IMG/VR virus record: IMGVR_UViG_3300034072_000758
Span: 372,001 to 436,000 of that record
Strand: one strand, 5' to 3'
DNA: 64,000 nucleotides
Below, piece after piece: positions 15,581 to 64,000 of the stretch. Each line of letters opens with the position of its first letter. Positions within the stretch are counted from its first letter, which is position 1. The position numbers and the translations under genes are program-made. The notes under the pieces were generated by a model. That model was not told the origin of the DNA. It made no database searches and saw nothing but the letters and a program-made list of their open reading frames with translations.

Positions 15581-16312
15581 ATGCGTAACCAGTTGTTAGA
15601 TGTGCTCTCAAAGACAGCAAGACTCTTTGATGCTTTGAAATTCACAGTAAGTGGAGATCGTGAGATCACCATTATTGGTTGGGACACATCCCAACACCTT
15701 TTCGTTGTTGGTACATTGACCAATGATGTTCCTGAGTTTGCTGGTGATTTTGCGATCACCAACCTGAAACTCTTGGATGGTCTGTTGAATTTCCCCAACT
15801 ACAAGACTGATGACGCTGTTATCACTGCCAAGAAGCGCGAAATAGATGGTTCAACAACTATCGAGTCTTTGGAGTTCAGGAATCCAAAGACTAAAAACTT
15901 CTCGGATTTTCGTCTGAGAAACACGAAGCTGATGAAAACGCCAAAGATCGTGAAGCCCGATTGGGATGTCACGGTAACTCTGGATGCCGGTAAGCTGGCT
16001 GAGTTTGAAAAATTGGTTTCGCTGTACAAAGAGTTCGATAAAGACTTTGGCCTCCATATAAAAGATGGCGACCTCTATGCGACGATTGGCACACAATCCA
16101 GCGCCACCCAAAGCACACAAATGGTTTTGGTCGAAGGTGTGGATTCCGAACTCCGTTCTGGCTTGGTTTGGAGCATGGCTATGTTCCAAGCTGTTATCGG
16201 TCAGGTCGGCAAGACCCCCACCATTAAAGTAGCTCGTGGTGGCGTCATGTCCATTTCCACGAAATCCGAACATGGGGTCTACGAATATCTAATCAGAGCA
16301 AAGAGAGTATAA
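15581..16312 (+). CDS. Sliding clamp (gp45-like)
   Basis: 243 aa, DFAITNLKLLDGLL pattern, immediately after the polymerase. Confidence 0.6.
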   Translation: MRNQLLDVLSKTARLFDALKFTVSGDREITIIGWDTSQHLFVVGTLTNDVPEFAGDFAITNLKLLDGLLNFPNYKTDDAVITAKKREIDGSTTIESLEFRNPKTKNFSDFRLRNTKLMKTPKIVKPDWDVTVTLDAGKLAEFEKLVSLYKEFDKDFGLHIKDGDLYATIGTQSSATQSTQMVLVEGVDSELRSGLVWSMAMFQAVIGQVGKTPTIKVARGGVMSISTKSEHGVYEYLIRAKRV

Positions 16313-33983: not shown

Positions 33984-35441
33984 ATGAGCAAAGAAGCAAC
34001 TCTCAAGATTTTGGACGAAGTGAACGTCAAATTTGACGGCCTCGATCCTTCCACTCGTCGCAAGATTAGTGACGCATGTAAGTATTTCATGCCCTATGCG
34101 CGCCACACCCCCCTATTCAAGTTAGGACGCTGGGATGGATATGTTAACTTCGCTACTGTTGGTGGTGGAACATATCTCAATCTTCTTGAGCAAGTCTTAC
34201 CTATCGTAGTTGAAGAGGGCTACGATCTCAAGCTCGATGATCGACGGGTCAATTACAATTTCGATTTCAAGCCAATTGGAACGGATTTCCTTTCGGATAC
34301 TCTTTGGCCGGAAGGTCACCGTTTCGCGGGCGAACCGATCATGCTGCGTGAAGATCAGGTAGAGGCCGTCAATCGATACCTTGCCAACCCTCATGGCATC
34401 CAGTGTCTCTCTACGGGGTTTGGTAAGACGATCCTCTCCGCCACATTGTCAAAGATTGTGGAGCCTTATGGTCGATCAATTGTGATCGTCCCGTCTAAGA
34501 CACTTGTTGAACAGACCGAAGAAGATTTTAAGAACATCGGTCTTGATGCTGGTGTGTTTTTCGGTGACCGCAAAGAATGGAATAAGACCCACACGATTTG
34601 TACATGGCAATCACTTTCTGTGCTCACAAAGAAAACTCGCCGCGATGAAGTGGAATGTACGATCCACGATTTCCTAGATGGCGTGATCGCAGTTCAAGTG
34701 GACGAATGCCACGGCCTGAAAGCCAACGAGCTTCGTGATGTAATGTGTGGTCCTATGGCCAATGTGCCAATCCGCTGGGGAATGACCGGCACTATTCCAA
34801 AGCAAGACTTCGAGCGAGTGTCCTTACAAATTACCATCGGTGGTGTCGTTGGCGAAGTTCGGGCTAAAGAACTTCAAGACGCCGGGTTCCTGTCAAAATG
34901 TGAGATCAACATTCTTCAAACTGAGGATGATCATGTGTCGTTCGCGGCCTATGACAAGGAATATAAATTCCTGACATCAGACGAAGATAGGTTGCGCTGG
35001 ATTGGTGAACTCGCCAATAGCCTAGAAGGCAACACGTTGGTTCTTGTCAATCGCATTGAAACTGGCAAGTCCTTGACGGCCATGATCGATAATGCGGTAT
35101 TCGTCTCTGGTGGGATGAAAACTAAAGCGCGCAAAGAAGAGTTCAAGGACACTAACCAATCGGACAACAAAACCCTTGTGGCAACATTCGGGGTTATGTC
35201 TACGGGTGTGAATATCCCGAAGATTCACAATCTCATTCTGGTAGAATGCGGCAAGTCGTTTGAGCGTACTATTCAGTCGGTAGGCCGTGTTCTTCGCCGT
35301 GCTGATGGTAAAAGCAAAGCTGACATCTACGATGTGTGCTCTACGCTCAAGTTCTCCAAGAAGCATCTTACCGAGCGTAAGAAGTATTACAAGGAAGCTG
35401 AATACCCATTCAAGATCACGAAAGTGAAATACAATGCGTAG
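33984..35441 (+). CDS. uvsW: UvsW-like superfamily 2 DNA helicase
   Basis: Walker A STGFGKT, DECH, GMTGT, STGVNIP, QSVGRVLR. Confidence 0.92.
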   Translation: MSKEATLKILDEVNVKFDGLDPSTRRKISDACKYFMPYARHTPLFKLGRWDGYVNFATVGGGTYLNLLEQVLPIVVEEGYDLKLDDRRVNYNFDFKPIGTDFLSDTLWPEGHRFAGEPIMLREDQVEAVNRYLANPHGIQCLSTGFGKTILSATLSKIVEPYGRSIVIVPSKTLVEQTEEDFKNIGLDAGVFFGDRKEWNKTHTICTWQSLSVLTKKTRRDEVECTIHDFLDGVIAVQVDECHGLKANELRDVMCGPMANVPIRWGMTGTIPKQDFERVSLQITIGGVVGEVRAKELQDAGFLSKCEINILQTEDDHVSFAAYDKEYKFLTSDEDRLRWIGELANSLEGNTLVLVNRIETGKSLTAMIDNAVFVSGGMKTKARKEEFKDTNQSDNKTLVATFGVMSTGVNIPKIHNLILVECGKSFERTIQSVGRVLRRADGKSKADIYDVCSTLKFSKKHLTERKKYYKEAEYPFKITKVKYNA

Positions 35442-35868
35442 GCACGGCTATTTCCTTACCATGAGTAAAACACAACGAGAAATCTATGTCGAGCGCGTCT
35501 TGCCGGTAGATGAAGAAATTGTGTTTCCTATTTTGGTGGAAATAGCCCCTCAACTTCCTGAGATACAGGAAAACAAGTTTTACTACTATATCATGAAGGG
35601 AAAGGCGAGAATTGCTTTCATCACAAAGCGCCTCGATAACATGTGTGTGGGGAGATATATTCTCAAGGATGGAAAATGGTCAGCCCCGACTTGTTTCAAA
35701 AACGAATGCTTCGCGCGAGGTCGATCATTGACCGCTATTCTTCCGCCGTTTCTGATAGACGAAGAATGGGCTAAAGAAGTCGCGGACAAGTCAGTATATG
35801 GGCGTTCTAAAGCTTTATCTCTGGCGGACTTGGAACGCATTGGTGGTGGTACTCCCGACCAGAATTGA
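35434..35868 (+). CDS. Hypothetical protein
   Basis: 144-aa ORF; 3' end overlaps the antisense tRNA-Glu. Confidence 0.55.
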   Translation: MRRHGYFLTMSKTQREIYVERVLPVDEEIVFPILVEIAPQLPEIQENKFYYYIMKGKARIAFITKRLDNMCVGRYILKDGKWSAPTCFKNECFARGRSLTAILPPFLIDEEWAKEVADKSVYGRSKALSLADLERIGGGTPDQN

Positions 35869-35921
35869 ACTGGCACTCTCCGCTTGAAAGGCGGGCGTCA
35901 TGACCATTAGACCACGGGAGC
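35847..35921 (-). tRNA. tRNA-Glu(UUC), third in transcript
   Basis: Cloverleaf GCTCCCG..CTTTCAA..TTCAATT..GGGAGT-A-CCA. Confidence 0.92.
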
Positions 35922-35945
35922 ATAGTCAACAAAGTGTTAAATTGT

Positions 35946-36020
35946 TGGTACTCCCAACGGGATTCGAACCCGTGTCGCCGGATTGAAAGTCCAGCATCCT
36001 GACCACTAGAAGATGGGAGC
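35946..36020 (-). tRNA. tRNA-Glu(UUC), second in transcript
   Basis: Cloverleaf, loop CTTTCAA, encoded CCA. Confidence 0.92.
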
Positions 36021-36053
36021 ATAGAAAATCAAAAGCCCGATCTCTCGTTCTTT

Positions 36054-36127
36054 TGGTACTCCCTACGGGAATCGAACCCGCGTTGTCAGATTGAAAGTCT
36101 GTTGTCCTGCCATTAGACGAAGGGAGC
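36054..36127 (-). tRNA. tRNA-Glu(UUC), first in transcript
   Basis: Cloverleaf, loop CTTTCAA, encoded CCA. Confidence 0.92.
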
Positions 36128-36165
36128 ATAAAGCCTCAAACCCTCGTCTATAAACGAAGGTGAGG

Positions 36166-36201
36166 TTAGCGTTCCTCTCGTTCCTCTCGGATGGCAAACA
36201 T
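36166..36201 (-). CDS. Glu-rich leader peptide MFAIREEREER
   Basis: AAGGA RBS; ATG TTT GCC ATC CGA GAG GAA CGA GAG GAA CGC TAA; stop is 38 nt upstream of the first tRNA-Glu. Confidence 0.7.
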   Translation of the reverse strand: MFAIREEREER

Positions 36202-36272
36202 AACAACAGTTCCTTAAAAAGCGCACATGCGCGTTGGTAGATAATTGTTCTATCAGAAACTATTTATCTGTG

Positions 36273-36653
36273 TCAAGCTTTTTGTTGTAAATAGTTTGGA
36301 ATAAAATGCGACACGTTCGGGTAAACCCAGCATGGGTCTTCTCGGTCGATCTCGATTGATTCCTCAGCATCAAAATCGTATCTGGTTAAAAATTCGTCTA
36401 ACGTATAAACGAATAAAAAATTTTGTGTCGGAATGCCATTTTTTAGGCGATGATACTCATCGAATGAGAGGATTTTTTTATACGCAAAAGAGCGGTGTAT
36501 TTCCCCTATTTGTGCGTTTGGCATTGGCACGAACGCATTGAGTTCAGCAAAGACCCGTTCATATTCGGCGTCAAGATCGTTGAGAAATGATTTCTTGCTT
36601 TCTCGTTCAACGGTGAAAATACCACCATCTACTACAATGATCAGACGTTCCAT
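36273..36653 (-). CDS. Hypothetical protein
   Basis: 126-aa ORF. Confidence 0.55.
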   Translation of the reverse strand: MERLIIVVDGGIFTVERESKKSFLNDLDAEYERVFAELNAFVPMPNAQIGEIHRSFAYKKILSFDEYHRLKNGIPTQNFLFVYTLDEFLTRYDFDAEESIEIDREDPCWVYPNVSHFIPNYLQQKA

Positions 36654-36771
36654 TGCTGTATATCCCTGTCAGTTAGTTCTCTCGATATAGCGCCACATTT
36701 ATCAATTTGTCAAATTCTAAAATTGACATCAAGAAAGGTGATTTGGTAGTTTTAAAAATGGAGTAAAGAGT

Positions 36772-37389
36772 ATGGTCAATTTCGCAGCCCTAGTAGCCAA
36801 ACCTATCGGACATGGTTTCACAGCCAATGCCGTGAAATATTATGAAGATACGGTGGTTGAACTTGCTTATAGCGGTAAGTTCGAAGAAGGCTCTTTTGAT
36901 CATCGGTTCATCGAAAGTCTCAGCAATCAGGCCGAATGGACAACAAGACAGTTCGATTGTCTTAAGAAACTGTTCGACCGCAATAAGATCGACCACTCGT
37001 CTCATAGATTGCGCACTCCCGTCCGCGAAAGCAACCGTCTCCTAGAGGATGAAATTCGATTTCTGGGCGATAACTTAGTAATCGTAACTAACAGCAACAG
37101 ACGGTATTCCGAGAAGCAAGAAATACTGACTGAACTTGGGGCCGAATATATCAAGAAACATCGGTTCTGGCAGATTACCATCGATAATCTGGATGTCATA
37201 GATATTCTGATTACTTATGCCGAAGAGTTCGGGGCGACTGTTGACGAAATAACCGCCCTGTATCTTGAAAGCTGCGATAGAAATATCGTAACGGTAGATG
37301 TTCAAGATGACGCTATTCATCTTCATTTGGTGGGTGAACCTCTTCTCGAATGCTTTATTAAAAATATGATGATCGGGGAAGCGATATGA
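36772..37389 (+). CDS. Hypothetical protein
   Basis: GGAG RBS; 205 aa. Confidence 0.65.
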   Translation: MVNFAALVAKPIGHGFTANAVKYYEDTVVELAYSGKFEEGSFDHRFIESLSNQAEWTTRQFDCLKKLFDRNKIDHSSHRLRTPVRESNRLLEDEIRFLGDNLVIVTNSNRRYSEKQEILTELGAEYIKKHRFWQITIDNLDVIDILITYAEEFGATVDEITALYLESCDRNIVTVDVQDDAIHLHLVGEPLLECFIKNMMIGEAI

Positions 37390-37952
37390 ACCGCAACTTC
37401 AAACTCCCGTATACGTCCGCGAATTGTCGCCAATTGGTTCGATTGAGCCAGCTAAAAGAAATAGTGCTTCCCGACGAAATAATTGAGAAAGCAAAAGAAG
37501 ACGTGGTTTCTTGTCCAGACTTATCAGCACAAGAAGCCGAGACCGTACAGCGAATGATTGATCTTGATTTCGATTTTACCCTACGATCTTCGCCGTTTAT
37601 GTTATCTCTGTTGATCTATGCGGCGGACAAAGCTGGTCGATCATTGAAATATTATGATCGCTTAAATCGATATGAGAAATCCGAAGAATACAGCATTCTT
37701 CGAGAAATGGATCAAATCGCAGCGCCGGATTTGATGACGATAAAAGAAAATATTATTGTCACTACTCGTGGTAATTTGAAATACATGCCCGGTGTAAAGC
37801 TTATAATGGGGCGTTTGACAGATGCCTTGTTCTCGGAACTTATAGAGAAAAATCTTTTACTAGAAAAAAGTAGAATGACTACTTTGACAGAAGAACGATT
37901 GTCTAGCTATGACAGTCAATTGATGAAATTTTATTTGAATTTGATCGAATAA
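37386..37952 (+). CDS. Hypothetical protein
   Basis: ATGA overlap with the previous gene. Confidence 0.6.
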   Translation: MNRNFKLPYTSANCRQLVRLSQLKEIVLPDEIIEKAKEDVVSCPDLSAQEAETVQRMIDLDFDFTLRSSPFMLSLLIYAADKAGRSLKYYDRLNRYEKSEEYSILREMDQIAAPDLMTIKENIIVTTRGNLKYMPGVKLIMGRLTDALFSELIEKNLLLEKSRMTTLTEERLSSYDSQLMKFYLNLIE

Positions 37953-37989: not shown

Positions 37990-38292
37990 ATGTTCATATA
38001 CATCATCAGCGACGGCACCAGTGTTAAAATTGGGATTAGCAAGACACCCGAAAAGCGCCTTAAGCAGCTTCAAACCGGGCATCCCAAGAAGCTGATCTTG
38101 TGTAAGGTCCGCGAGGTTCCCGACGACCGCGCCAAGAAGCTGGAAAACATCATTCACAGAACTTGCGGCCATTACCGTCTCAAAGGAGAGTGGTTCTCGA
38201 TGTCATTGCCTCTGGCTGAATCGATGGTTCATGATGTTCTTTTGAGAACTGATGAATTGAAAAATCTTGACAATTATTTCATACTTAACTAA
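37990..38292 (+). CDS. GIY-YIG (T5orf172-like) nuclease
   Basis: FIYII...VKIGISK.PEKRLKQLQTG...LE..IH....GEWF. Confidence 0.85.
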   Translation: MFIYIISDGTSVKIGISKTPEKRLKQLQTGHPKKLILCKVREVPDDRAKKLENIIHRTCGHYRLKGEWFSMSLPLAESMVHDVLLRTDELKNLDNYFILN

Positions 38293-52304: not shown

Positions 52305-52349
52305 GTCTAAACACTTTGTCCGAAGTTTGTATACAAATTTAGGACATAT

Positions 52350-53023: not shown

Positions 53024-53033
53024 CGGAGGGATT

Positions 53034-53154
53034 GTAGGTGGACCAGATGGCATGGGGAACCTTCATATGTGAATGTCGTATAAGTGAACCCGTATAGGGT
53101 GAATACGCTCCCCCTATGTTGGGAGAGATTGTGGTTCGAATCCACACGTTTACA
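53034..53154 (+). ncRNA. tRNA-like element with an expanded, non-canonical centre
   Basis: Perfect T-arm TGTGG-TTCGAAT-CCACA; weak acceptor stem; no canonical anticodon loop. Confidence 0.45.
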
Positions 53155-53155
53155 C

Positions 53156-55706: not shown

Positions 55707-55735
55707 TTCGTGAGGGACGCTCTGTCCCTCATTAT

Positions 55736-55806
55736 TGAGGGATGGTGTAACGGTAACACATCTGACTCTGACTCAGAAGTTCTAGGTTCGAATCCTAGTC
55801 CCTCAA
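55736..55806 (+). tRNA. tRNA-Gln(CUG)
   Basis: T1-A72; loop CTCTGAC. Confidence 0.92.
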
Positions 55807-55817
55807 CAAGGTATGTT

Positions 55818-56770: not shown

Positions 56771-56811
56771 ATATTTACAGCATGGCCTTGAATGTTGTAT
56801 TCTAGGCTTAT

Positions 56812-57762: not shown

Positions 57763-59074
57763 ATGGTGATGAACCGGTGACTTGAGCTTTGGTAAAGCTC
57801 GAATTTACCAGTTAAAGAGAATTAAGCTGGTCCCCGATTTGCTTAGTTCGACGGTTCATCATCATATTGAACTAAATTGGATGGAGAGGTTGCGGTAACG
57901 AGTCCCCAGAGTCATTTGACTCAGCCTTTGGACTTAACCCCGTCCGTGCTTTTCGGTGTGGTAGCTCAAGATTGACAAGAGCGTTCCATCCAATTTAGTT
58001 TAATTGGGTAAGTCTTCGGGCCTACCGTTGGGGGAAGGATCAACACGGCTGCTGGCATGTTCCAGACAGGTGCCTTCCCTTTTAAATTCGCTCGAAAGAG
58101 CAAAGAGATTGTTCGGTAGGATCAAATCTTGGGTGATCGTGCGCTGGTCATCATGAGATAAAAGACCGGGGGCTAGTCCAGCCTCAAGTATCGGTGAAAG
58201 TCCGATCCGAACAACCAAATTCTGTGCTTCGTTGCGAAAGCGAAGGGGATTGACAGTCAGTCCCTAGCCTCATTGGAGGTCATCACAGAACGTTACCCCA
58301 CGGTGAAATATACGTGTGGCAGAGGGAGAGAGCCAATTGCGAGGAAATGCGCGCCGGTCTTTCCCTCATATAATTCGCTTGAAAGAGCAAATAACAAGTT
58401 GGCCGCTCGCATGATCGTTCCGAGAGGTAAGAGCAAAGATCGGTAGATGTTTCTACCAAATTGACGCCAACAACCGAGAAAGAGGGAACTACGGGCCTAA
58501 CCAATCCGTAAATCTCTCAGTGAGTGGACAGGAGTTGCGGACGCCCTTGGTCGGGAAGGTCACAACTCCGAAGTTGCTCAAAGTTTGGGCCGAAAGGCCA
58601 TAGCCGCGTGGTGACGAACCAGTAAGTCGGCTACGAGTTTCACCGAGAATGAGGCTGGGTGTACCCGTAAGTCCTCTACTCTCTGGTGTTTAAAGTTGAA
58701 TACGGACGAGCGCCCTGTGCGCGAACAGGTGATGGGCGCAGCCCTAGAGGATGGCAACGTCCGCTATACCTTCGGGGAAGCATCGGTTGGTAGTGATTAA
58801 TCCAATCCGCTCGTGTTCTACTCTAAACATTTCGGGTGACTAACATTTAGGGCTGGGGTCGCTACCCAAATCCGGTGTTGGTGTACAATTAATGAACGGC
58901 AAACTAGACTTGTTTCAGTAATTCTTTGTGCTGGCTTATTTGATAGAGCAAACAGCCTGAAAACTAAATAGAATACTCCCTGTGTGATCTGGCACTGGCA
59001 GGATTGTGGTTGACAAGACCCACTCGGCGAGTCTAAATGGACAGGCATTTACGGTACGCCTACTTATTACCGTT
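57763..59074 (+). ncRNA. Large ornate structured RNA, GOLLD-like
   Basis: ~1.3 kb without a credible ORF; dense stems with GNRA/UUCG loops and long-range pairings; ends at tRNA-Ala. Confidence 0.75.
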
Positions 59075-59076
59075 AT

Positions 59077-59879: not shown

Positions 59880-59986
59880 TGGGCTGCTTGGAGTTTAGCT
59901 GGGTTCGAATCCCGCTCGATCCACCATTAAGATTGGGTCGATGTCACCGGAAGACAAGAGCGGGTTCGAGTCCCGTCCAGTCCACA
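59880..59986 (+). ncRNA. Anticodon-less double tRNA-like (Ala minihelix) element with crossed acceptor stems
   Basis: Two T-arms; TCGATCC-A-CCA pairs with the downstream GGGTCGA (G3-U70); GGGCTG pairs with the distal CAGTCC. Confidence 0.6.
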
Positions 59987-59994
59987 CCCTTTAT

Positions 59995-62910: not shown

Positions 62911-64000
62911 TCACACGAACCAGTCGGTTCCTTCTTTTGTATCCAATAGGGTGACGCCGCGTTCGGCCAAAGCATTCCGAATGATGTCCGCCATGACCCA
63001 ATCTTTACCGGCTCTTGCCAGATTGCGGTCGTAGATCAGACCTTCGATGATTTCACGCTCGTCCTTAGACACATTCTTGAACCAATCCTCGTATCGATGA
63101 TTGAGGACACCAAGCAATTGCGCAGCCGCAACGAACTCGGACTTGGTTTCCGGCTTCATCAAACTGGATAATTCAGCCAGAGCCAAAGGCGTATTCAGAT
63201 CATCATGAAGATGATCGAGGAATGATTGTGGCACCGGAACTTCGTGCGTGGTGAGCTTTGCCGTCTGGCGCAGGAAGGCATAGTAGCCATCCAGCCGGTT
63301 CTTCGTGGTTTGAAGAAGTTCTGGGGTCCAATTCAAGACGGTTCTATAATGCGCTGAGAGCAACGCCAAGCGCACGATTTCCCCATCCCATTCCTTTACG
63401 AGATCGTGGACCAACACGACATTCCCTACCGACTTGGACATCTTGCCGTTATTGGTCAGGAACTCGTTATGCATCCAGTAGCGGGAATACTCGTGATTAT
63501 GGCCGCAATGACCTTGAGCACATAACCCCTGAGAGATTTCATTCTCATGGTGCGGAAAGGCCAAGTCTATACCCCCGCCATGAATGTCGATAGGAAGACC
63601 CAGATTGGCTTCAATCATGGCCGAGCACTCAATGTGCCAACCGGGGCGTCCAGCACCCCACGGACTTTCCCAAGCCGGTTCACCGGGCTTCGACGGTTTC
63701 CATAGTACGAAGTCTTTTTGGTCGCGCTTATACGACACCTCACCGATCCGGCTTTCGGCTTCGTCATCCGAACCATTGGAGAAAACACCATGATCCGGGT
63801 ATGAATCCACGTCAAACAAAACGTGACCTTCCGACACATACGCATGGCCGTTCTTGATCAGACGCACAATCATGTCGATCATGGCCGGGATATGGTTGGT
63901 CGCCAGAGGTTCAATGGGAGGCCGTAGGACGCCCACGGAGGCCATGTCTTGACGATATATGTCCGTGTAGCGTTCAGCAATAACCTTGTAGTCCACGCCC
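62911..64000 (-). CDS. cysS: Cysteinyl-tRNA synthetase (N-terminus beyond the window)
   Basis: DFVLWK..WESPWGAGRPGWHIECSAM; DIHGGGIDLAFPHHENE; WMHNE; KMSKS; DDLNTP; ADIIRNAL. Confidence 0.96.
   Translation of the reverse strand, partial: GVDYKVIAERYTDIYRQDMASVGVLRPPIEPLATNHIPAMIDMIVRLIKNGHAYVSEGHVLFDVDSYPDHGVFSNGSDDEAESRIGEVSYKRDQKDFVLWKPSKPGEPAWESPWGAGRPGWHIECSAMIEANLGLPIDIHGGGIDLAFPHHENEISQGLCAQGHCGHNHEYSRYWMHNEFLTNNGKMSKSVGNVVLVHDLVKEWDGEIVRLALLSAHYRTVLNWTPELLQTTKNRLDGYYAFLRQTAKLTTHEVPVPQSFLDHLHDDLNTPLALAELSSLMKPETKSEFVAAAQLLGVLNHRYEDWFKNVSKDEREIIEGLIYDRNLARAGKDWVMADIIRNALAERGVTLLDTKEGTDWFV

What the first reader, a model, noticed from the sequence alone, without database searches (positions are those of the whole stretch)
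35847..36215. Glu-rich leader peptide (MFAIREEREER) directly upstream of three tRNA-Glu genes
On the minus strand an AAGGA RBS precedes ATG TTT GCC ATC CGA GAG GAA CGA GAG GAA CGC TAA. Next comes a hairpin (CCTCA-CCTTCGT-TTATAG-ACGAGGG-TT-TGAGG), then three tandem tRNA-Glu(UUC) genes. Both Glu codon types occur twice and both are read by the downstream tRNA. Either CGAGAGG repeat can alternatively pair with CCTTCG in the hairpin 5' arm. This looks like ribosome-stalling control of tRNA-Glu synthesis by charged tRNA-Glu levels. Caveat: the hairpin lacks a long U-tract, so the switching mechanism is unclear.
Basis: partly seen in the sequence, partly recalled or inferred. Interest (0 to 1): 0.85.

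Follow-up and report, generated by a model that had tools for sequence, protein, structure and literature searches.

The report
Structured leader before three tRNA-Glu genes
A giant phage carries a compact cassette of three glutamate-tRNA genes preceded by a conserved, strongly folded leader that contains a tiny glutamate-rich reading frame; every sequence feature is real, but nothing yet shows that translating this frame controls tRNA output.

Summary

An SD-led ORF with at least 4 Glu codons arises in about 1.5e-4 of shuffled leaders. However, the Glu codons come from one 9-nt tandem duplication, and its core 9-mer also sits in the untranslated tRNA1-tRNA2 spacer.

The hairpin is not an intrinsic terminator. 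It lacks a U-tract, one relative weakens the tail further, and canonical U-tract terminators exist elsewhere in this phage. It fits a phage-wide layout of stem-loop, then TAT, then tRNA.

New here: the hairpin's 3' arm is also complementary to the first 13 nt of tRNA-Glu-1 (p<0.002). Masking the 5' arm, as a ribosome at the stop codon would, flips the predicted fold and unfolds the tRNA.

The 430-bp cassette has sharp borders in a relative, and 107 nt of leader there are unchanged.

Best reading (0.5): an autonomous tRNA-Glu cassette whose constrained leader serves folding and processing, with an incidental ORF. A translation-gated folding relay remains possible (about 0.2). There are no expression data and no diverged homologues.

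The parts
36271..36276 (-). TTGACA, a -35-like hexamer and the upstream border of the conserved cassette. It overlaps the TGA stop (36275-36273) of the 126-aa ORFan.
   Evidence: Sequence. The match of the 773-nt contig from run X3 ends exactly at 36276, while the contig itself runs on unlike the window. The consensus scan did not report it as a promoter, because the best -10 candidate (TAGAAC, 36252-36247, 18-nt spacer) lacks the final T.
36235..36246 (-). Variable patch, probably near the transcription start.
   Evidence: All 5 substitutions and the 1-nt deletion that separate the X3 relative from the window within the leader fall in this stretch.
36216..36232 (-). Small GC stem-loop (GCGC-ATGT-GCGC) followed by a run of five T.
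   Evidence: Sequence and fold. It is unchanged in the X3 relative. Its stem is too short for the terminator scan.
36211..36215 (-). AAGGA Shine-Dalgarno-like motif, 9 nt before the ATG. It is also the first of three AGGAAC copies (36214-36209, 36185-36180, 36176-36171).
   Evidence: Sequence. It is unpaired in the leader fold. Only 23 of 52 called genes of this phage have any SD-like 4-mer and few have a 5-mer, so this is a strong site for this genome.
36166..36201 (-). Mini-ORF MFAIREEREER plus TAA. It contains a tandem 9-nt repeat, CGAGAGGAA twice (36189-36172).
   Evidence: The 9-mer GAACGAGAG (36183-36175) recurs in the untranslated spacer at 36050-42.
36154..36165 (-). Strand A: the hairpin's 5' arm, CCTCACCTTCGT. 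It resembles the 5' end of tRNA-Glu-1, sharing the 7-mer CCTTCGT.
36134..36149 (-). Strand B: the end of the loop plus the 3' arm, AGACGAGGGTTTGAGG. It pairs either with A or with tRNA-Glu-1 positions 2-13.
   Evidence: The duplex of the upstream 35 nt with the tRNA's 5' end is -17.7 kcal/mol, and 0 of 500 shuffles reach this. The helix forms in folds where A is masked.
36128..36133 (-). Single-stranded linker CTTTAT. Its TAT is the phage-wide -3..-1 motif before tRNAs.
   Evidence: TAT precedes 13 of 22 tRNAs, against a 1.7% background. A relative reads CTCTAT.
36054..36127 (-). tRNA-Glu(UUC) copy 1. Strand C is its first 13 nt (36127-36115).
36021..36053 (-). Spacer between tRNA 1 and tRNA 2. 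It carries GAACGAGAG (36050-36042).
   Evidence: X3 shows no change over 36031-36053. X9 has changes at 36024 and 36042.
35946..36020 (-). tRNA-Glu(UUC) copy 2, 80% identical to copy 1.
35922..35945 (-). Spacer between tRNA 2 and tRNA 3, which diverges in the relative.
   Evidence: X3 has 1 substitution and 4 indel events here.
35847..35921 (-). tRNA-Glu(UUC) copy 3 (72-75% identical to copies 1 and 2). Its CCA end is the downstream border of the cassette. The opposite-strand 144-aa ORF overlaps it by 22 nt.
   Evidence: The match of the X3 202-nt contig stops at 35847.

Best explanation
The region 36276-35847 (minus strand) is a self-contained tRNA-Glu expression cassette in a 517-kb phage. 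It consists of a promoter-like TTGACA, a leader of about 110-145 nt, and three diverged tRNA-Glu(UUC) isodecoders with encoded CCA.

The leader is functional RNA, but it is not a terminator-type attenuator. Its strong stem-loop is one instance of a layout used throughout this phage: a stem-loop, then 3-6 single-stranded nucleotides ending in UAU, then the tRNA.

Inferred mechanism:
- RNase P cuts after the UAU.
- The stem-loop leaves the upstream RNA with a protected 3' end.
- The stem-loop also keeps strand B locked away. B would otherwise pair with the first 13 nt of tRNA-Glu-1, so locking it lets the tRNA fold as it is transcribed.

The Glu-rich mini-ORF is a by-product of a 9-nt tandem duplication of a purine-rich spacer motif. 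It has good initiation signals and may be translated, but the cassette does not need this in order to work.

Shown here: the anatomy, the fold statistics, the recurring layout, the B:C complementarity, and the cassette borders and conservation. Inferred: the promoter, the processing role, and the lack of a coding role.
For: Three bona fide tRNA-Glu genes are present.

Hairpin and layout:
- The hairpin has z = -5 but no U-tract. A relative weakens the tail further, to CTCTAT.
- Real U-tract terminators sit next to other tRNAs of this phage.
- TAT occupies -3..-1 before 13 of 22 tRNAs, against 1.7% background. A stem-loop ends just upstream in 8 of 15 leaders against 23% background, p = 0.01.
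- The same arrangement (the 5' arm mimics the tRNA 5' end, the 3' arm is complementary to it) occurs at tRNA-Gln 55736, which has no Gln mini-ORF.
- At equilibrium, the A:B hairpin plus the cloverleaf is the minimum free energy structure (-39.7 kcal/mol), and B pairs with A with probability above 0.98.

Mini-ORF:
- The Glu codons derive from one 9-nt duplication, and GAACGAGAG recurs in the untranslated tRNA1-tRNA2 spacer.
- No other of about 18 tRNA leaders in this phage has a cognate-rich SD-led ORF.
- None of 12 other phage tRNA-Glu genes has one either.

Conservation and borders:
- In run X3 the cassette is matched from exactly 36276 to exactly 35847.
- There are 0 changes in 36128-36234, against 6 changes in the 12-nt patch and 5 events in the 24-nt spacer 2-3.
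- A helicase fragment in the same run is only 85% identical.
- The cassette is absent beside the helicase in relatives at 63-71% identity.
Against: An SD-led ORF with at least 4 cognate codons is rare by chance (1.5e-4 per shuffled leader; unique among 20 mini-ORFs).

Its stop codon abuts strand A, which is exactly where a ribosome would switch B from A to the tRNA.

Perfect conservation of 107 nt is more than a processing stem-loop alone would seem to need.

The promoter is only a -35 hexamer with a poor -10.

The processing role rests on general knowledge of RNase P and 3'-exonuclease protection, not on data from this phage.
Confidence: 0.5

Rival explanations
1. Translation-gated folding relay, a modified form of the first reader's idea.

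Four consecutive, mutually exclusive strands are involved:
- 1: the CGAGAGG repeats inside the ORF.
- 2: strand A.
- 3: strand B.
- 4: the 5' end of tRNA-Glu-1.

Proposed logic:
- When a ribosome stalls on the Glu codons because charged tRNA-Glu is scarce, A stays free. A:B forms, tRNA-Glu-1 folds and is matured.
- When a ribosome runs to the stop codon, it covers A. B then traps tRNA positions 2-13, and folding and RNase P cleavage of tRNA-Glu-1 are delayed.

This would be negative feedback on tRNA-Glu supply that works through folding and processing rather than transcription termination.
For: - The initiation signals are strong for this genome, and SD and ATG are unpaired.
- There are 4 Glu codons in 10, with p about 1.5e-4.
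- The stop codon is directly adjacent to A.
- B:C complementarity is -17.7 kcal/mol, p < 0.002.
- Folds with A masked as at codon 10 or at the stop form B:C and lose the acceptor and D arms. A mask at codon 6 keeps A:B and the cloverleaf.
- The leader is fully conserved over 107 nt in a relative.
- An engineered analogue shows that sequestering the pre-tRNA 5' region controls RNase P cleavage in E. coli (PMC7897497, seen).
Against: - There is no evidence of translation.
- It would affect only the first of three tRNAs.
- A:B plus the cloverleaf is 12 kcal/mol more stable than the trapped state, so any effect would be transient.
- The A/B/C arrangement also exists at tRNA-Gln without a cognate leader ORF.
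- The Glu codons stem from one duplication of a motif that also occurs in an untranslated spacer.
- It does not recur in this phage's other leaders or in 12 other phages.
- No natural precedent turned up in the literature.
- I found this pattern after looking at many folds, so the post-hoc risk is real.
Confidence: 0.2
2. Decayed repeat unit without function. The leader is the remains of an older spacer-plus-tRNA-Glu unit of the tandem array. The hairpin is a collapsed tRNA copy, and the SD, ATG and ORF are accidents. The apparent conservation reflects recent spread of the cassette.
For: - tRNA debris is common in this phage. There is a perfect acceptor-stem minihelix before tRNA-Gln and T-arm-like fragments near 59.9 kb and 53.1 kb.
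- A shares CCTTCGT with tRNA-Glu-1, and a gap-tolerant alignment of the hairpin to tRNA-1 gives p = 0.04.
- GAACGAGAG is shared by the leader and spacer 1-2.
- The cassette has sharp borders and is missing in more distant relatives.
Against: - Neither the tRNA-Glu covariance model nor Rfam tRNA finds a hit in the leader.
- A strict local alignment is not significant (p = 0.21).
- The leader shows 0 changes in 107 nt, while spacer 2-3 and the 12-nt patch of the same cassette have diverged. This argues for constraint rather than recency.
Confidence: 0.15
3. Classical attenuation or termination. The hairpin terminates transcription before the tRNAs (or ends the upstream 126-aa gene), and ribosome stalling lets the CGAGAGG repeats act as antiterminator.
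For: - The hairpin is stable and GC-rich.
- The ORF with Glu codons lies upstream of it.
- The second repeat can pair with A.
Against: - The tail is CTTTAT, not a U-tract, and the terminator scan does not call it.
- A relative has CTCTAT.
- Genuine terminators in this phage have T-runs.
- The antiterminator pairing is weak (about -9.7 kcal/mol for the whole alternative fold against -16.7).
- A ribosome stalled on the Glu codons would cover the proposed antiterminator strand itself.
Confidence: 0.04
4. Protein- or RNA-binding platform. The three AGGAAC copies (the one in the SD plus the two in the repeats) are GGA-type binding sites for a regulator, for example a CsrA/RsmA-like protein or the 30S subunit. 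This regulator would control stability or processing of the precursor, and the ORF would be irrelevant.
For: - Three AGGAAC hexamers lie within 45 nt.
- The 11-mer is not enriched elsewhere in the window, so it is a local feature.
- The region is conserved in the X3 relative.
Against: - Two of the three copies come from a single duplication.
- No binding partner is known.
- The motifs are not displayed in hairpin loops in the predicted fold.
Confidence: 0.05

Closest known systems
Leader-peptide transcription attenuators (trpL, hisL, pheL, thrL, leuL; pheM of pheST)
   Same: - A short SD-led ORF with clustered codons for one amino acid.
- The ORF lies upstream of genes concerned with that same amino acid.
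- The ORF overlaps or abuts strands that can pair alternatively.
   Different: - There is no intrinsic terminator.
- The genes downstream are the tRNAs themselves, not biosynthetic or synthetase genes.
- The ORF is shorter (11 codons), and its Glu codons alternate with Arg.
- The candidate output helix would trap a tRNA 5' end instead of stopping the polymerase.
- No natural tRNA-operon example turned up in the literature searches.
Engineered RNase P riboswitch (PMC7897497)
   Same: Pre-tRNA maturation is controlled by sequestering or exposing the 5' leader/acceptor region through alternative pairing in the leader.
   Different: That system is synthetic and ligand-driven. Here the trigger would be a ribosome, and nothing has been tested.
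mRNA-tRNA co-transcripts separated by RNase P (polycistronic tRNA operons of E. coli, PMC7049720; tRNA punctuation in organelles, from general knowledge)
   Same: tRNAs lie directly after coding or leader RNA. RNase P cleavage at the tRNA 5' end would create the 3' end of the upstream RNA, here just after a stable stem-loop.
   Different: The regular stem-loop, NTAT, tRNA spacing and the mimicry of the tRNA 5' end by the stem-loop are not described features of those systems, as far as I know.
T-box riboswitch
   Same: A leader RNA that senses a specific tRNA, using a codon-like specifier.
   Different: There is no Rfam T-box match and no UGGN bulge. T-boxes control synthetase and biosynthesis genes, and they sense uncharged tRNA directly, without a ribosome.
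Phage tRNA gene clusters (T4, T5-like and jumbo phages)
   Same: Multiple phage-encoded tRNAs occur in arrays. The tRNA-Glu genes are about 80% similar to annotated tRNA-Glu genes of several phages, including T5-like ones.
   Different: Three diverged isodecoders of a single tRNA form a separate cassette. It lies on the opposite strand and 16 kb away from the main tRNA region, and it has its own long conserved leader.

Membership tests
Leader-peptide transcription attenuator | Short ORF with a ribosome-binding site and start codon in the leader | tested here: met
   AAGGA-N9-ATG with 11 codons. SD and ATG are unpaired. Translation itself was not tested.
Leader-peptide transcription attenuator | Cluster of codons for the regulating amino acid | tested here: met
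   4 Glu codons in 10, p about 1.5e-4. However, they arose by a single 9-nt duplication.
Leader-peptide transcription attenuator | Intrinsic terminator (GC-rich stem followed by a U-tract) before the regulated genes | tested here: not met
   The stem is present, but the tail is CTTTAT and the scan does not call it. A relative has CTCTAT.
Leader-peptide transcription attenuator | Antiterminator pairing that overlaps the ORF and competes with the terminator | tested here: inconclusive
   The second repeat can pair with the 5' arm, but only weakly (alternative fold -9.7 against -16.7 kcal/mol).
Leader-peptide transcription attenuator | Regulatory codons and frame conserved in diverged homologues | not testable with these tools
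   Only near-identical relatives cover the leader. There was no match in viral, metagenome or genome collections.
T-box riboswitch | Match to the T-box covariance model (Stem I specifier loop, T-box bulge) | tested here: not met
   The Rfam scan of 34500-37500 at E up to 1 returned only tRNA hits and weak plastid-ycf2 hits on the opposite strand of the tRNAs.
tRNA-Glu genes | Cloverleaf, UUC anticodon, high score against the tRNA model | tested here: met
   ARAGORN; Rfam 60.7-61.5 bits; tRNA-Glu model 73-82 bits. Compensated changes occur in the anticodon stem across 10 sequences.
Degenerate (ghost) tRNA copy as the origin of the hairpin | Detectable similarity of the hairpin to a tRNA-Glu model or sequence | tested here: inconclusive
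   There is no covariance-model hit at E up to 10, although that model was built on a structure string mis-registered for the acceptor and T arms. Strict local alignment gives p = 0.21. Gap-tolerant alignment gives p = 0.04. The 7-mer CCTTCGT is shared.
Sigma-70-type promoter | -35 and -10 hexamers with 16-18 nt spacing | tested here: inconclusive
   TTGACA is perfect, but the best -10 is TAGAAC at 18 nt, and the scan does not report it. Clearer promoters of this type precede tRNA-Asn and tRNA-Gly.

The most novel reading that the evidence does not exclude
The leader is a ribosome-operated relay that tunes maturation of a phage tRNA to the supply of its own charged form.
- Stalling on the four Glu codons leaves the hairpin closed, and tRNA-Glu-1 folds.
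- Unhindered translation to the stop codon opens the hairpin, and its 3' arm captures the first 13 nt of the tRNA.

This would be the first natural leader-peptide control of a tRNA gene. It would also be a new output for attenuation logic: folding and RNase P access instead of transcription termination.
Probability: 0.18. Interest if true: 0.85.

Novelty: new member of a known kind. Interest (0 to 1): 0.42.

Why it matters
Phage tRNAs are increasingly seen as tools for late translation and for escaping host tRNA-cleaving defences, yet how phages control their expression is almost unknown.

If the mini-ORF really gates tRNA-Glu maturation, attenuation logic would extend to tRNA genes themselves, with a new read-out. 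That would give a compact natural sensor of charged-tRNA supply.

Even under the ordinary reading, several points are concrete and testable statements about pre-tRNA processing in giant phages:
- the recurring stem-loop, TAT, tRNA layout;
- stem-loops that mimic the tRNA's own 5' end;
- a 430-bp tRNA cassette with sharp borders.

Tried and rejected
Searches for relatives:
- Megablast of the region against GenBank phages found nothing. Distant blastn found only generic tRNA-Glu similarity.
- Both flanking proteins (126 aa and 144 aa) are ORFans, so they could not anchor relatives.
- Exact or loop-wildcard searches for the hairpin and for the hairpin-tRNA junction returned only the source contig in viral contigs, and nothing in metagenome or genome collections.
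- Helicase-anchored searches gave relatives of at most 71% identity. Where the downstream flank was available (63-64% identity) there were no tRNAs beside the helicase; the contig of the 71% relative ends just after the helicase.
- The Logan contigs L032 and L033 are identical to the window, so they are not independent.

Expression data:
- The search for RNA runs gave two runs holding only short pieces, one of them probably DNA. There is no evidence for or against transcription.

Extending the genome view:
- Walking 17 kb to the right of the window found only three more tRNAs, none with a cognate mini-ORF.

Hypotheses tested and set aside:
- Ghost tRNA: a tRNA-Glu covariance model finds nothing in the leader.
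- Long-range pairing of the SD/ATG region with the D and anticodon arms of tRNA-Glu-1 dominates the unconstrained MFE. However, it is only marginal against shuffles (p = 0.046) and is weakened by substitutions present in relatives, so I set it aside.
- The 11-mer of the repeat is not enriched elsewhere in the window.

My own error:
- My hand-written structure for alignment A1 was mis-registered for the acceptor and T arms.
- In one search only the D and anticodon stems are therefore informative.
- Model R1 was built on the same string.

Literature:
- Literature searches found no natural leader-peptide control of a tRNA operon.
Full report
**What is there.**
All coordinates below are on the minus strand. 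ARAGORN finds three tRNA-Glu(UUC) genes at 36127-36054, 36020-35946 and 35921-35847. Rfam scores them 60.7-61.5 bits. They are only 72-80% identical to each other but share the acceptor end and the anticodon loop, and all encode CCA.

- AAGGA at 36215-36211, then 9 nt, then ATG at 36201.
- Ten further codons, with GAG and GAA twice each, ending in TAA at 36168-36166.
- A hairpin beginning on the very next base (36165-36134), followed by CTTTAT and tRNA-Glu-1.

The hairpin folds at -16.7 kcal/mol with z = -5.0.

**Where it sits.**
The window is part of a 516,805-bp phage contig from a subsurface metagenome. Its helicase is about 50% identical to those of jumbo phages such as PA5oct and Atu_ph07.

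The tRNA-Glu trio and a 126-aa ORFan form a small minus-strand island between plus-strand genes. The island is 16 kb from the main tRNA region, which lies on the other strand. The 144-aa plus-strand ORF overlaps the last 22 nt of tRNA-3. Stop codon usage is ordinary.

**Is the mini-ORF more than chance?**
- In 20,000 dinucleotide shuffles of the 145-nt leader, an SD-led ATG ORF of 8-25 codons appears in 2.4%. One with at least 4 Glu codons appears in 0.015%.
- In the real 128 kb (both strands) there are 20 such mini-ORFs. Only this one is dominated by a single amino acid.
- The RBS is strong for this genome. Only 23 of 52 called genes have even a 4-nt SD-like motif.

Three points temper this:
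- The four Glu codons are one event, a tandem duplication of CGAGAGGAA (36189-36172).
- The core 9-mer GAACGAGAG also occurs in the untranslated spacer between tRNA 1 and tRNA 2 (36050-36042).
- The finding was selected from a large scan, and I cannot quantify that look-elsewhere factor.

**The hairpin is not a terminator.**
- Its tail is CTTTAT, and the terminator scan does not call it.
- A relative in run X10 reads CTCTAT.
- This phage does have canonical U-tract terminators beside other tRNAs.

The TAT is instead a phage-wide signal. It occupies -3..-1 before 13 of 22 tRNAs, against a 1.7% background. A stem-loop ends a few nucleotides upstream of the tRNA in 8 of 15 leaders, against 23% of random sites, p = 0.01. 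From general knowledge, bacterial RNase P favours U at -1 and a single-stranded leader. I therefore read the layout as a processing context.

**A three-strand arrangement.**
The 3' arm plus the end of the loop (strand B, 36149-36134) is complementary to two partners. One is the 5' arm (strand A). The other is positions 2-13 of tRNA-Glu-1 (strand C).
- The duplex of the 35 nt upstream of tRNA-Glu-1 (which contain B) with the tRNA's first 16 nt is -17.7 kcal/mol, with 0 of 500 shuffles as good.
- A and C share CCTTCGT.
- At equilibrium, A:B plus the cloverleaf is the MFE (-39.7 kcal/mol), and B pairs with A with probability above 0.98.
- If A is made unavailable, as by a ribosome with codon 10 or the stop codon in its A site, B:C forms and the acceptor and D arms are lost (-27.9 kcal/mol).
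- A mask corresponding to a stall at codon 6 leaves A:B and the cloverleaf intact.

The same arrangement occurs before tRNA-Gln(CUG) at 55736. There the upstream stem-loop is a perfect copy of the tRNA's own acceptor stem, 4 nt after the stop of a real gene. That site has no dedicated cognate-rich leader ORF, so the arrangement does not depend on one.

**Origin.**
The phage's tRNA region contains other tRNA debris, so the Glu hairpin could be a collapsed tRNA copy. Support for this is weak:
- A gap-tolerant alignment gives p = 0.04.
- A strict alignment gives p = 0.21.
- Neither Rfam nor a tRNA-Glu covariance model hits the leader.

**Relatives.**
No diverged homologue of the leader was found in any collection. 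The flanking proteins are ORFans. Where sequence downstream of the helicase was available (relatives at 63-64% identity), there are no tRNAs beside it.

Laying public contigs on the region was informative:
- In run X3, a 773-nt contig matches 36031-36276 and then runs on unlike the window.
- In the same run, a 202-nt contig matches 35959-35847 and then diverges.
- The shared unit therefore runs exactly from TTGACA to the CCA of tRNA-3.
- Within it, all leader differences (5 substitutions and 1 deletion) fall in 36235-36246.
- Spacer 2-3 has 5 events in 24 nt, and tRNA-1 has 2 substitutions.
- The stretch 36128-36234 (small 5' stem-loop, SD, ORF, hairpin, linker) has none.
- A helicase fragment in the same run is only 85% identical.

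The leader is thus at least as constrained as the tRNAs. This argues that it is functional. It does not show whether the function lies in RNA structure or in coding.

**No recurrence.**
No other of about 18 tRNA leaders in this phage has an SD-led cognate-rich ORF. None of 12 tRNA-Glu genes in other phages has one either. Literature searches found no natural leader-peptide control of a tRNA operon. An engineered riboswitch shows that sequestering the pre-tRNA 5' region can gate RNase P (PMC7897497).

**Reading.**
- Most likely (0.5): this is an autonomous tRNA-Glu cassette. Its constrained leader supplies a 5' stem-loop, a processing context (stem-loop, then CUUUAU, then tRNA), and a clamp that keeps B off the tRNA. 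The ORF is an incidental product of a duplicated purine-rich motif.
- A modified version, a ribosome-gated folding relay with the correct feedback sign, fits the anatomy surprisingly well. It is untested, would act on one tRNA only, and would be thermodynamically transient (0.2).
- A functionless decayed repeat (0.15) and a GGA-motif binding platform (0.05) remain possible.

**Verdict.**
The features are real and statistically unusual, and the leader is conserved. The proposed regulation is neither shown nor excluded. Under the best reading this is a new member of a known kind: a phage tRNA operon with a structured leader. Interest is moderate, driven by a low-probability but cheaply testable novel reading.

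Noticed in passing
window-wide; e.g. 52347-52349, 55733-55735, 56809-56811, 59074-59076, 36128-36130: TAT occupies positions -3..-1 before 13 of 22 tRNA genes (background 1.7%). A stem-loop ends 3-7 nt upstream in 8 of 15 leaders (p = 0.01). This looks like a phage-wide pre-tRNA 5' processing context.
   Followed up: partly
window 55711-55731, upstream of tRNA-Gln(CUG) 55736-55807: A stem-loop whose two arms are exact copies of the tRNA's own 7-bp acceptor stem (a minihelix). It lies 4 nt after the stop codon of the upstream gene and 4 nt (TTAT) before the tRNA. It is either a collapsed duplicate or a functional mimic.
   Followed up: partly
window ~59900-59994 and 53025-53155: Stretches with T-arm-like GGTTCGA motifs, and acceptor-like ends in the first stretch, that neither ARAGORN nor Rfam calls as tRNAs. 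They may be tRNA fragments or unusual tRNAs. A short motif, ATTGTAGGTGG, recurs at about 53030 and 53240.
   Followed up: no
window 36276 and 35847: In a related phage (run X3), similarity to the window begins exactly at TTGACA and ends exactly at the CCA of the third tRNA-Glu. The 430-bp cassette therefore behaves as a discrete, possibly mobile unit. It is absent beside the helicase in relatives at 63-64% identity, where the downstream flank was available.
   Followed up: partly
window 35847-35868: The 144-aa plus-strand ORFan ends inside the antisense of tRNA-Glu-3 (22-nt overlap). This suggests that cassette insertion reshaped its C-terminus.
   Followed up: no
window 35847-36127: The three tRNA-Glu(UUC) copies are only 72-80% identical, with compensated stem changes, but have identical acceptor ends and anticodon loops. 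They are diverged isodecoders rather than recent duplicates.
   Followed up: partly
window 62911-64000 (continues to about 64245; L031 10533-11867), minus strand: A 444-aa gene with a class I aminoacyl-tRNA synthetase catalytic domain (Pfam PF01406, the CysRS type) lies next to the tRNA region.
   Followed up: no
L031 ~15810-15870 and ~16110-16160 (window ~68190-68540): Near-consensus sigma-70-like promoters lie directly before tRNA-Asn (TTGACT-17-TATAGT) and tRNA-Gly (TTGCGA-17-TAAGAT). A canonical U-tract terminator follows tRNA-Val.
   Followed up: no
proteins P0015, P0023, P0028, P0035, P0067 (relatives of the helicase at window 33984-35441): Some related helicases are 130-360 residues longer. 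Several of these carry intein/Hint-type or LAGLIDADG-type Pfam domains. The window's copy carries none.
   Followed up: no
window 37990-38292: A 100-aa ORF with T5orf172/MUG113 (GIY-YIG-like) domains lies about 1.7 kb from the cassette. It could be a mobile-element nuclease and so relevant to cassette mobility.
   Followed up: no
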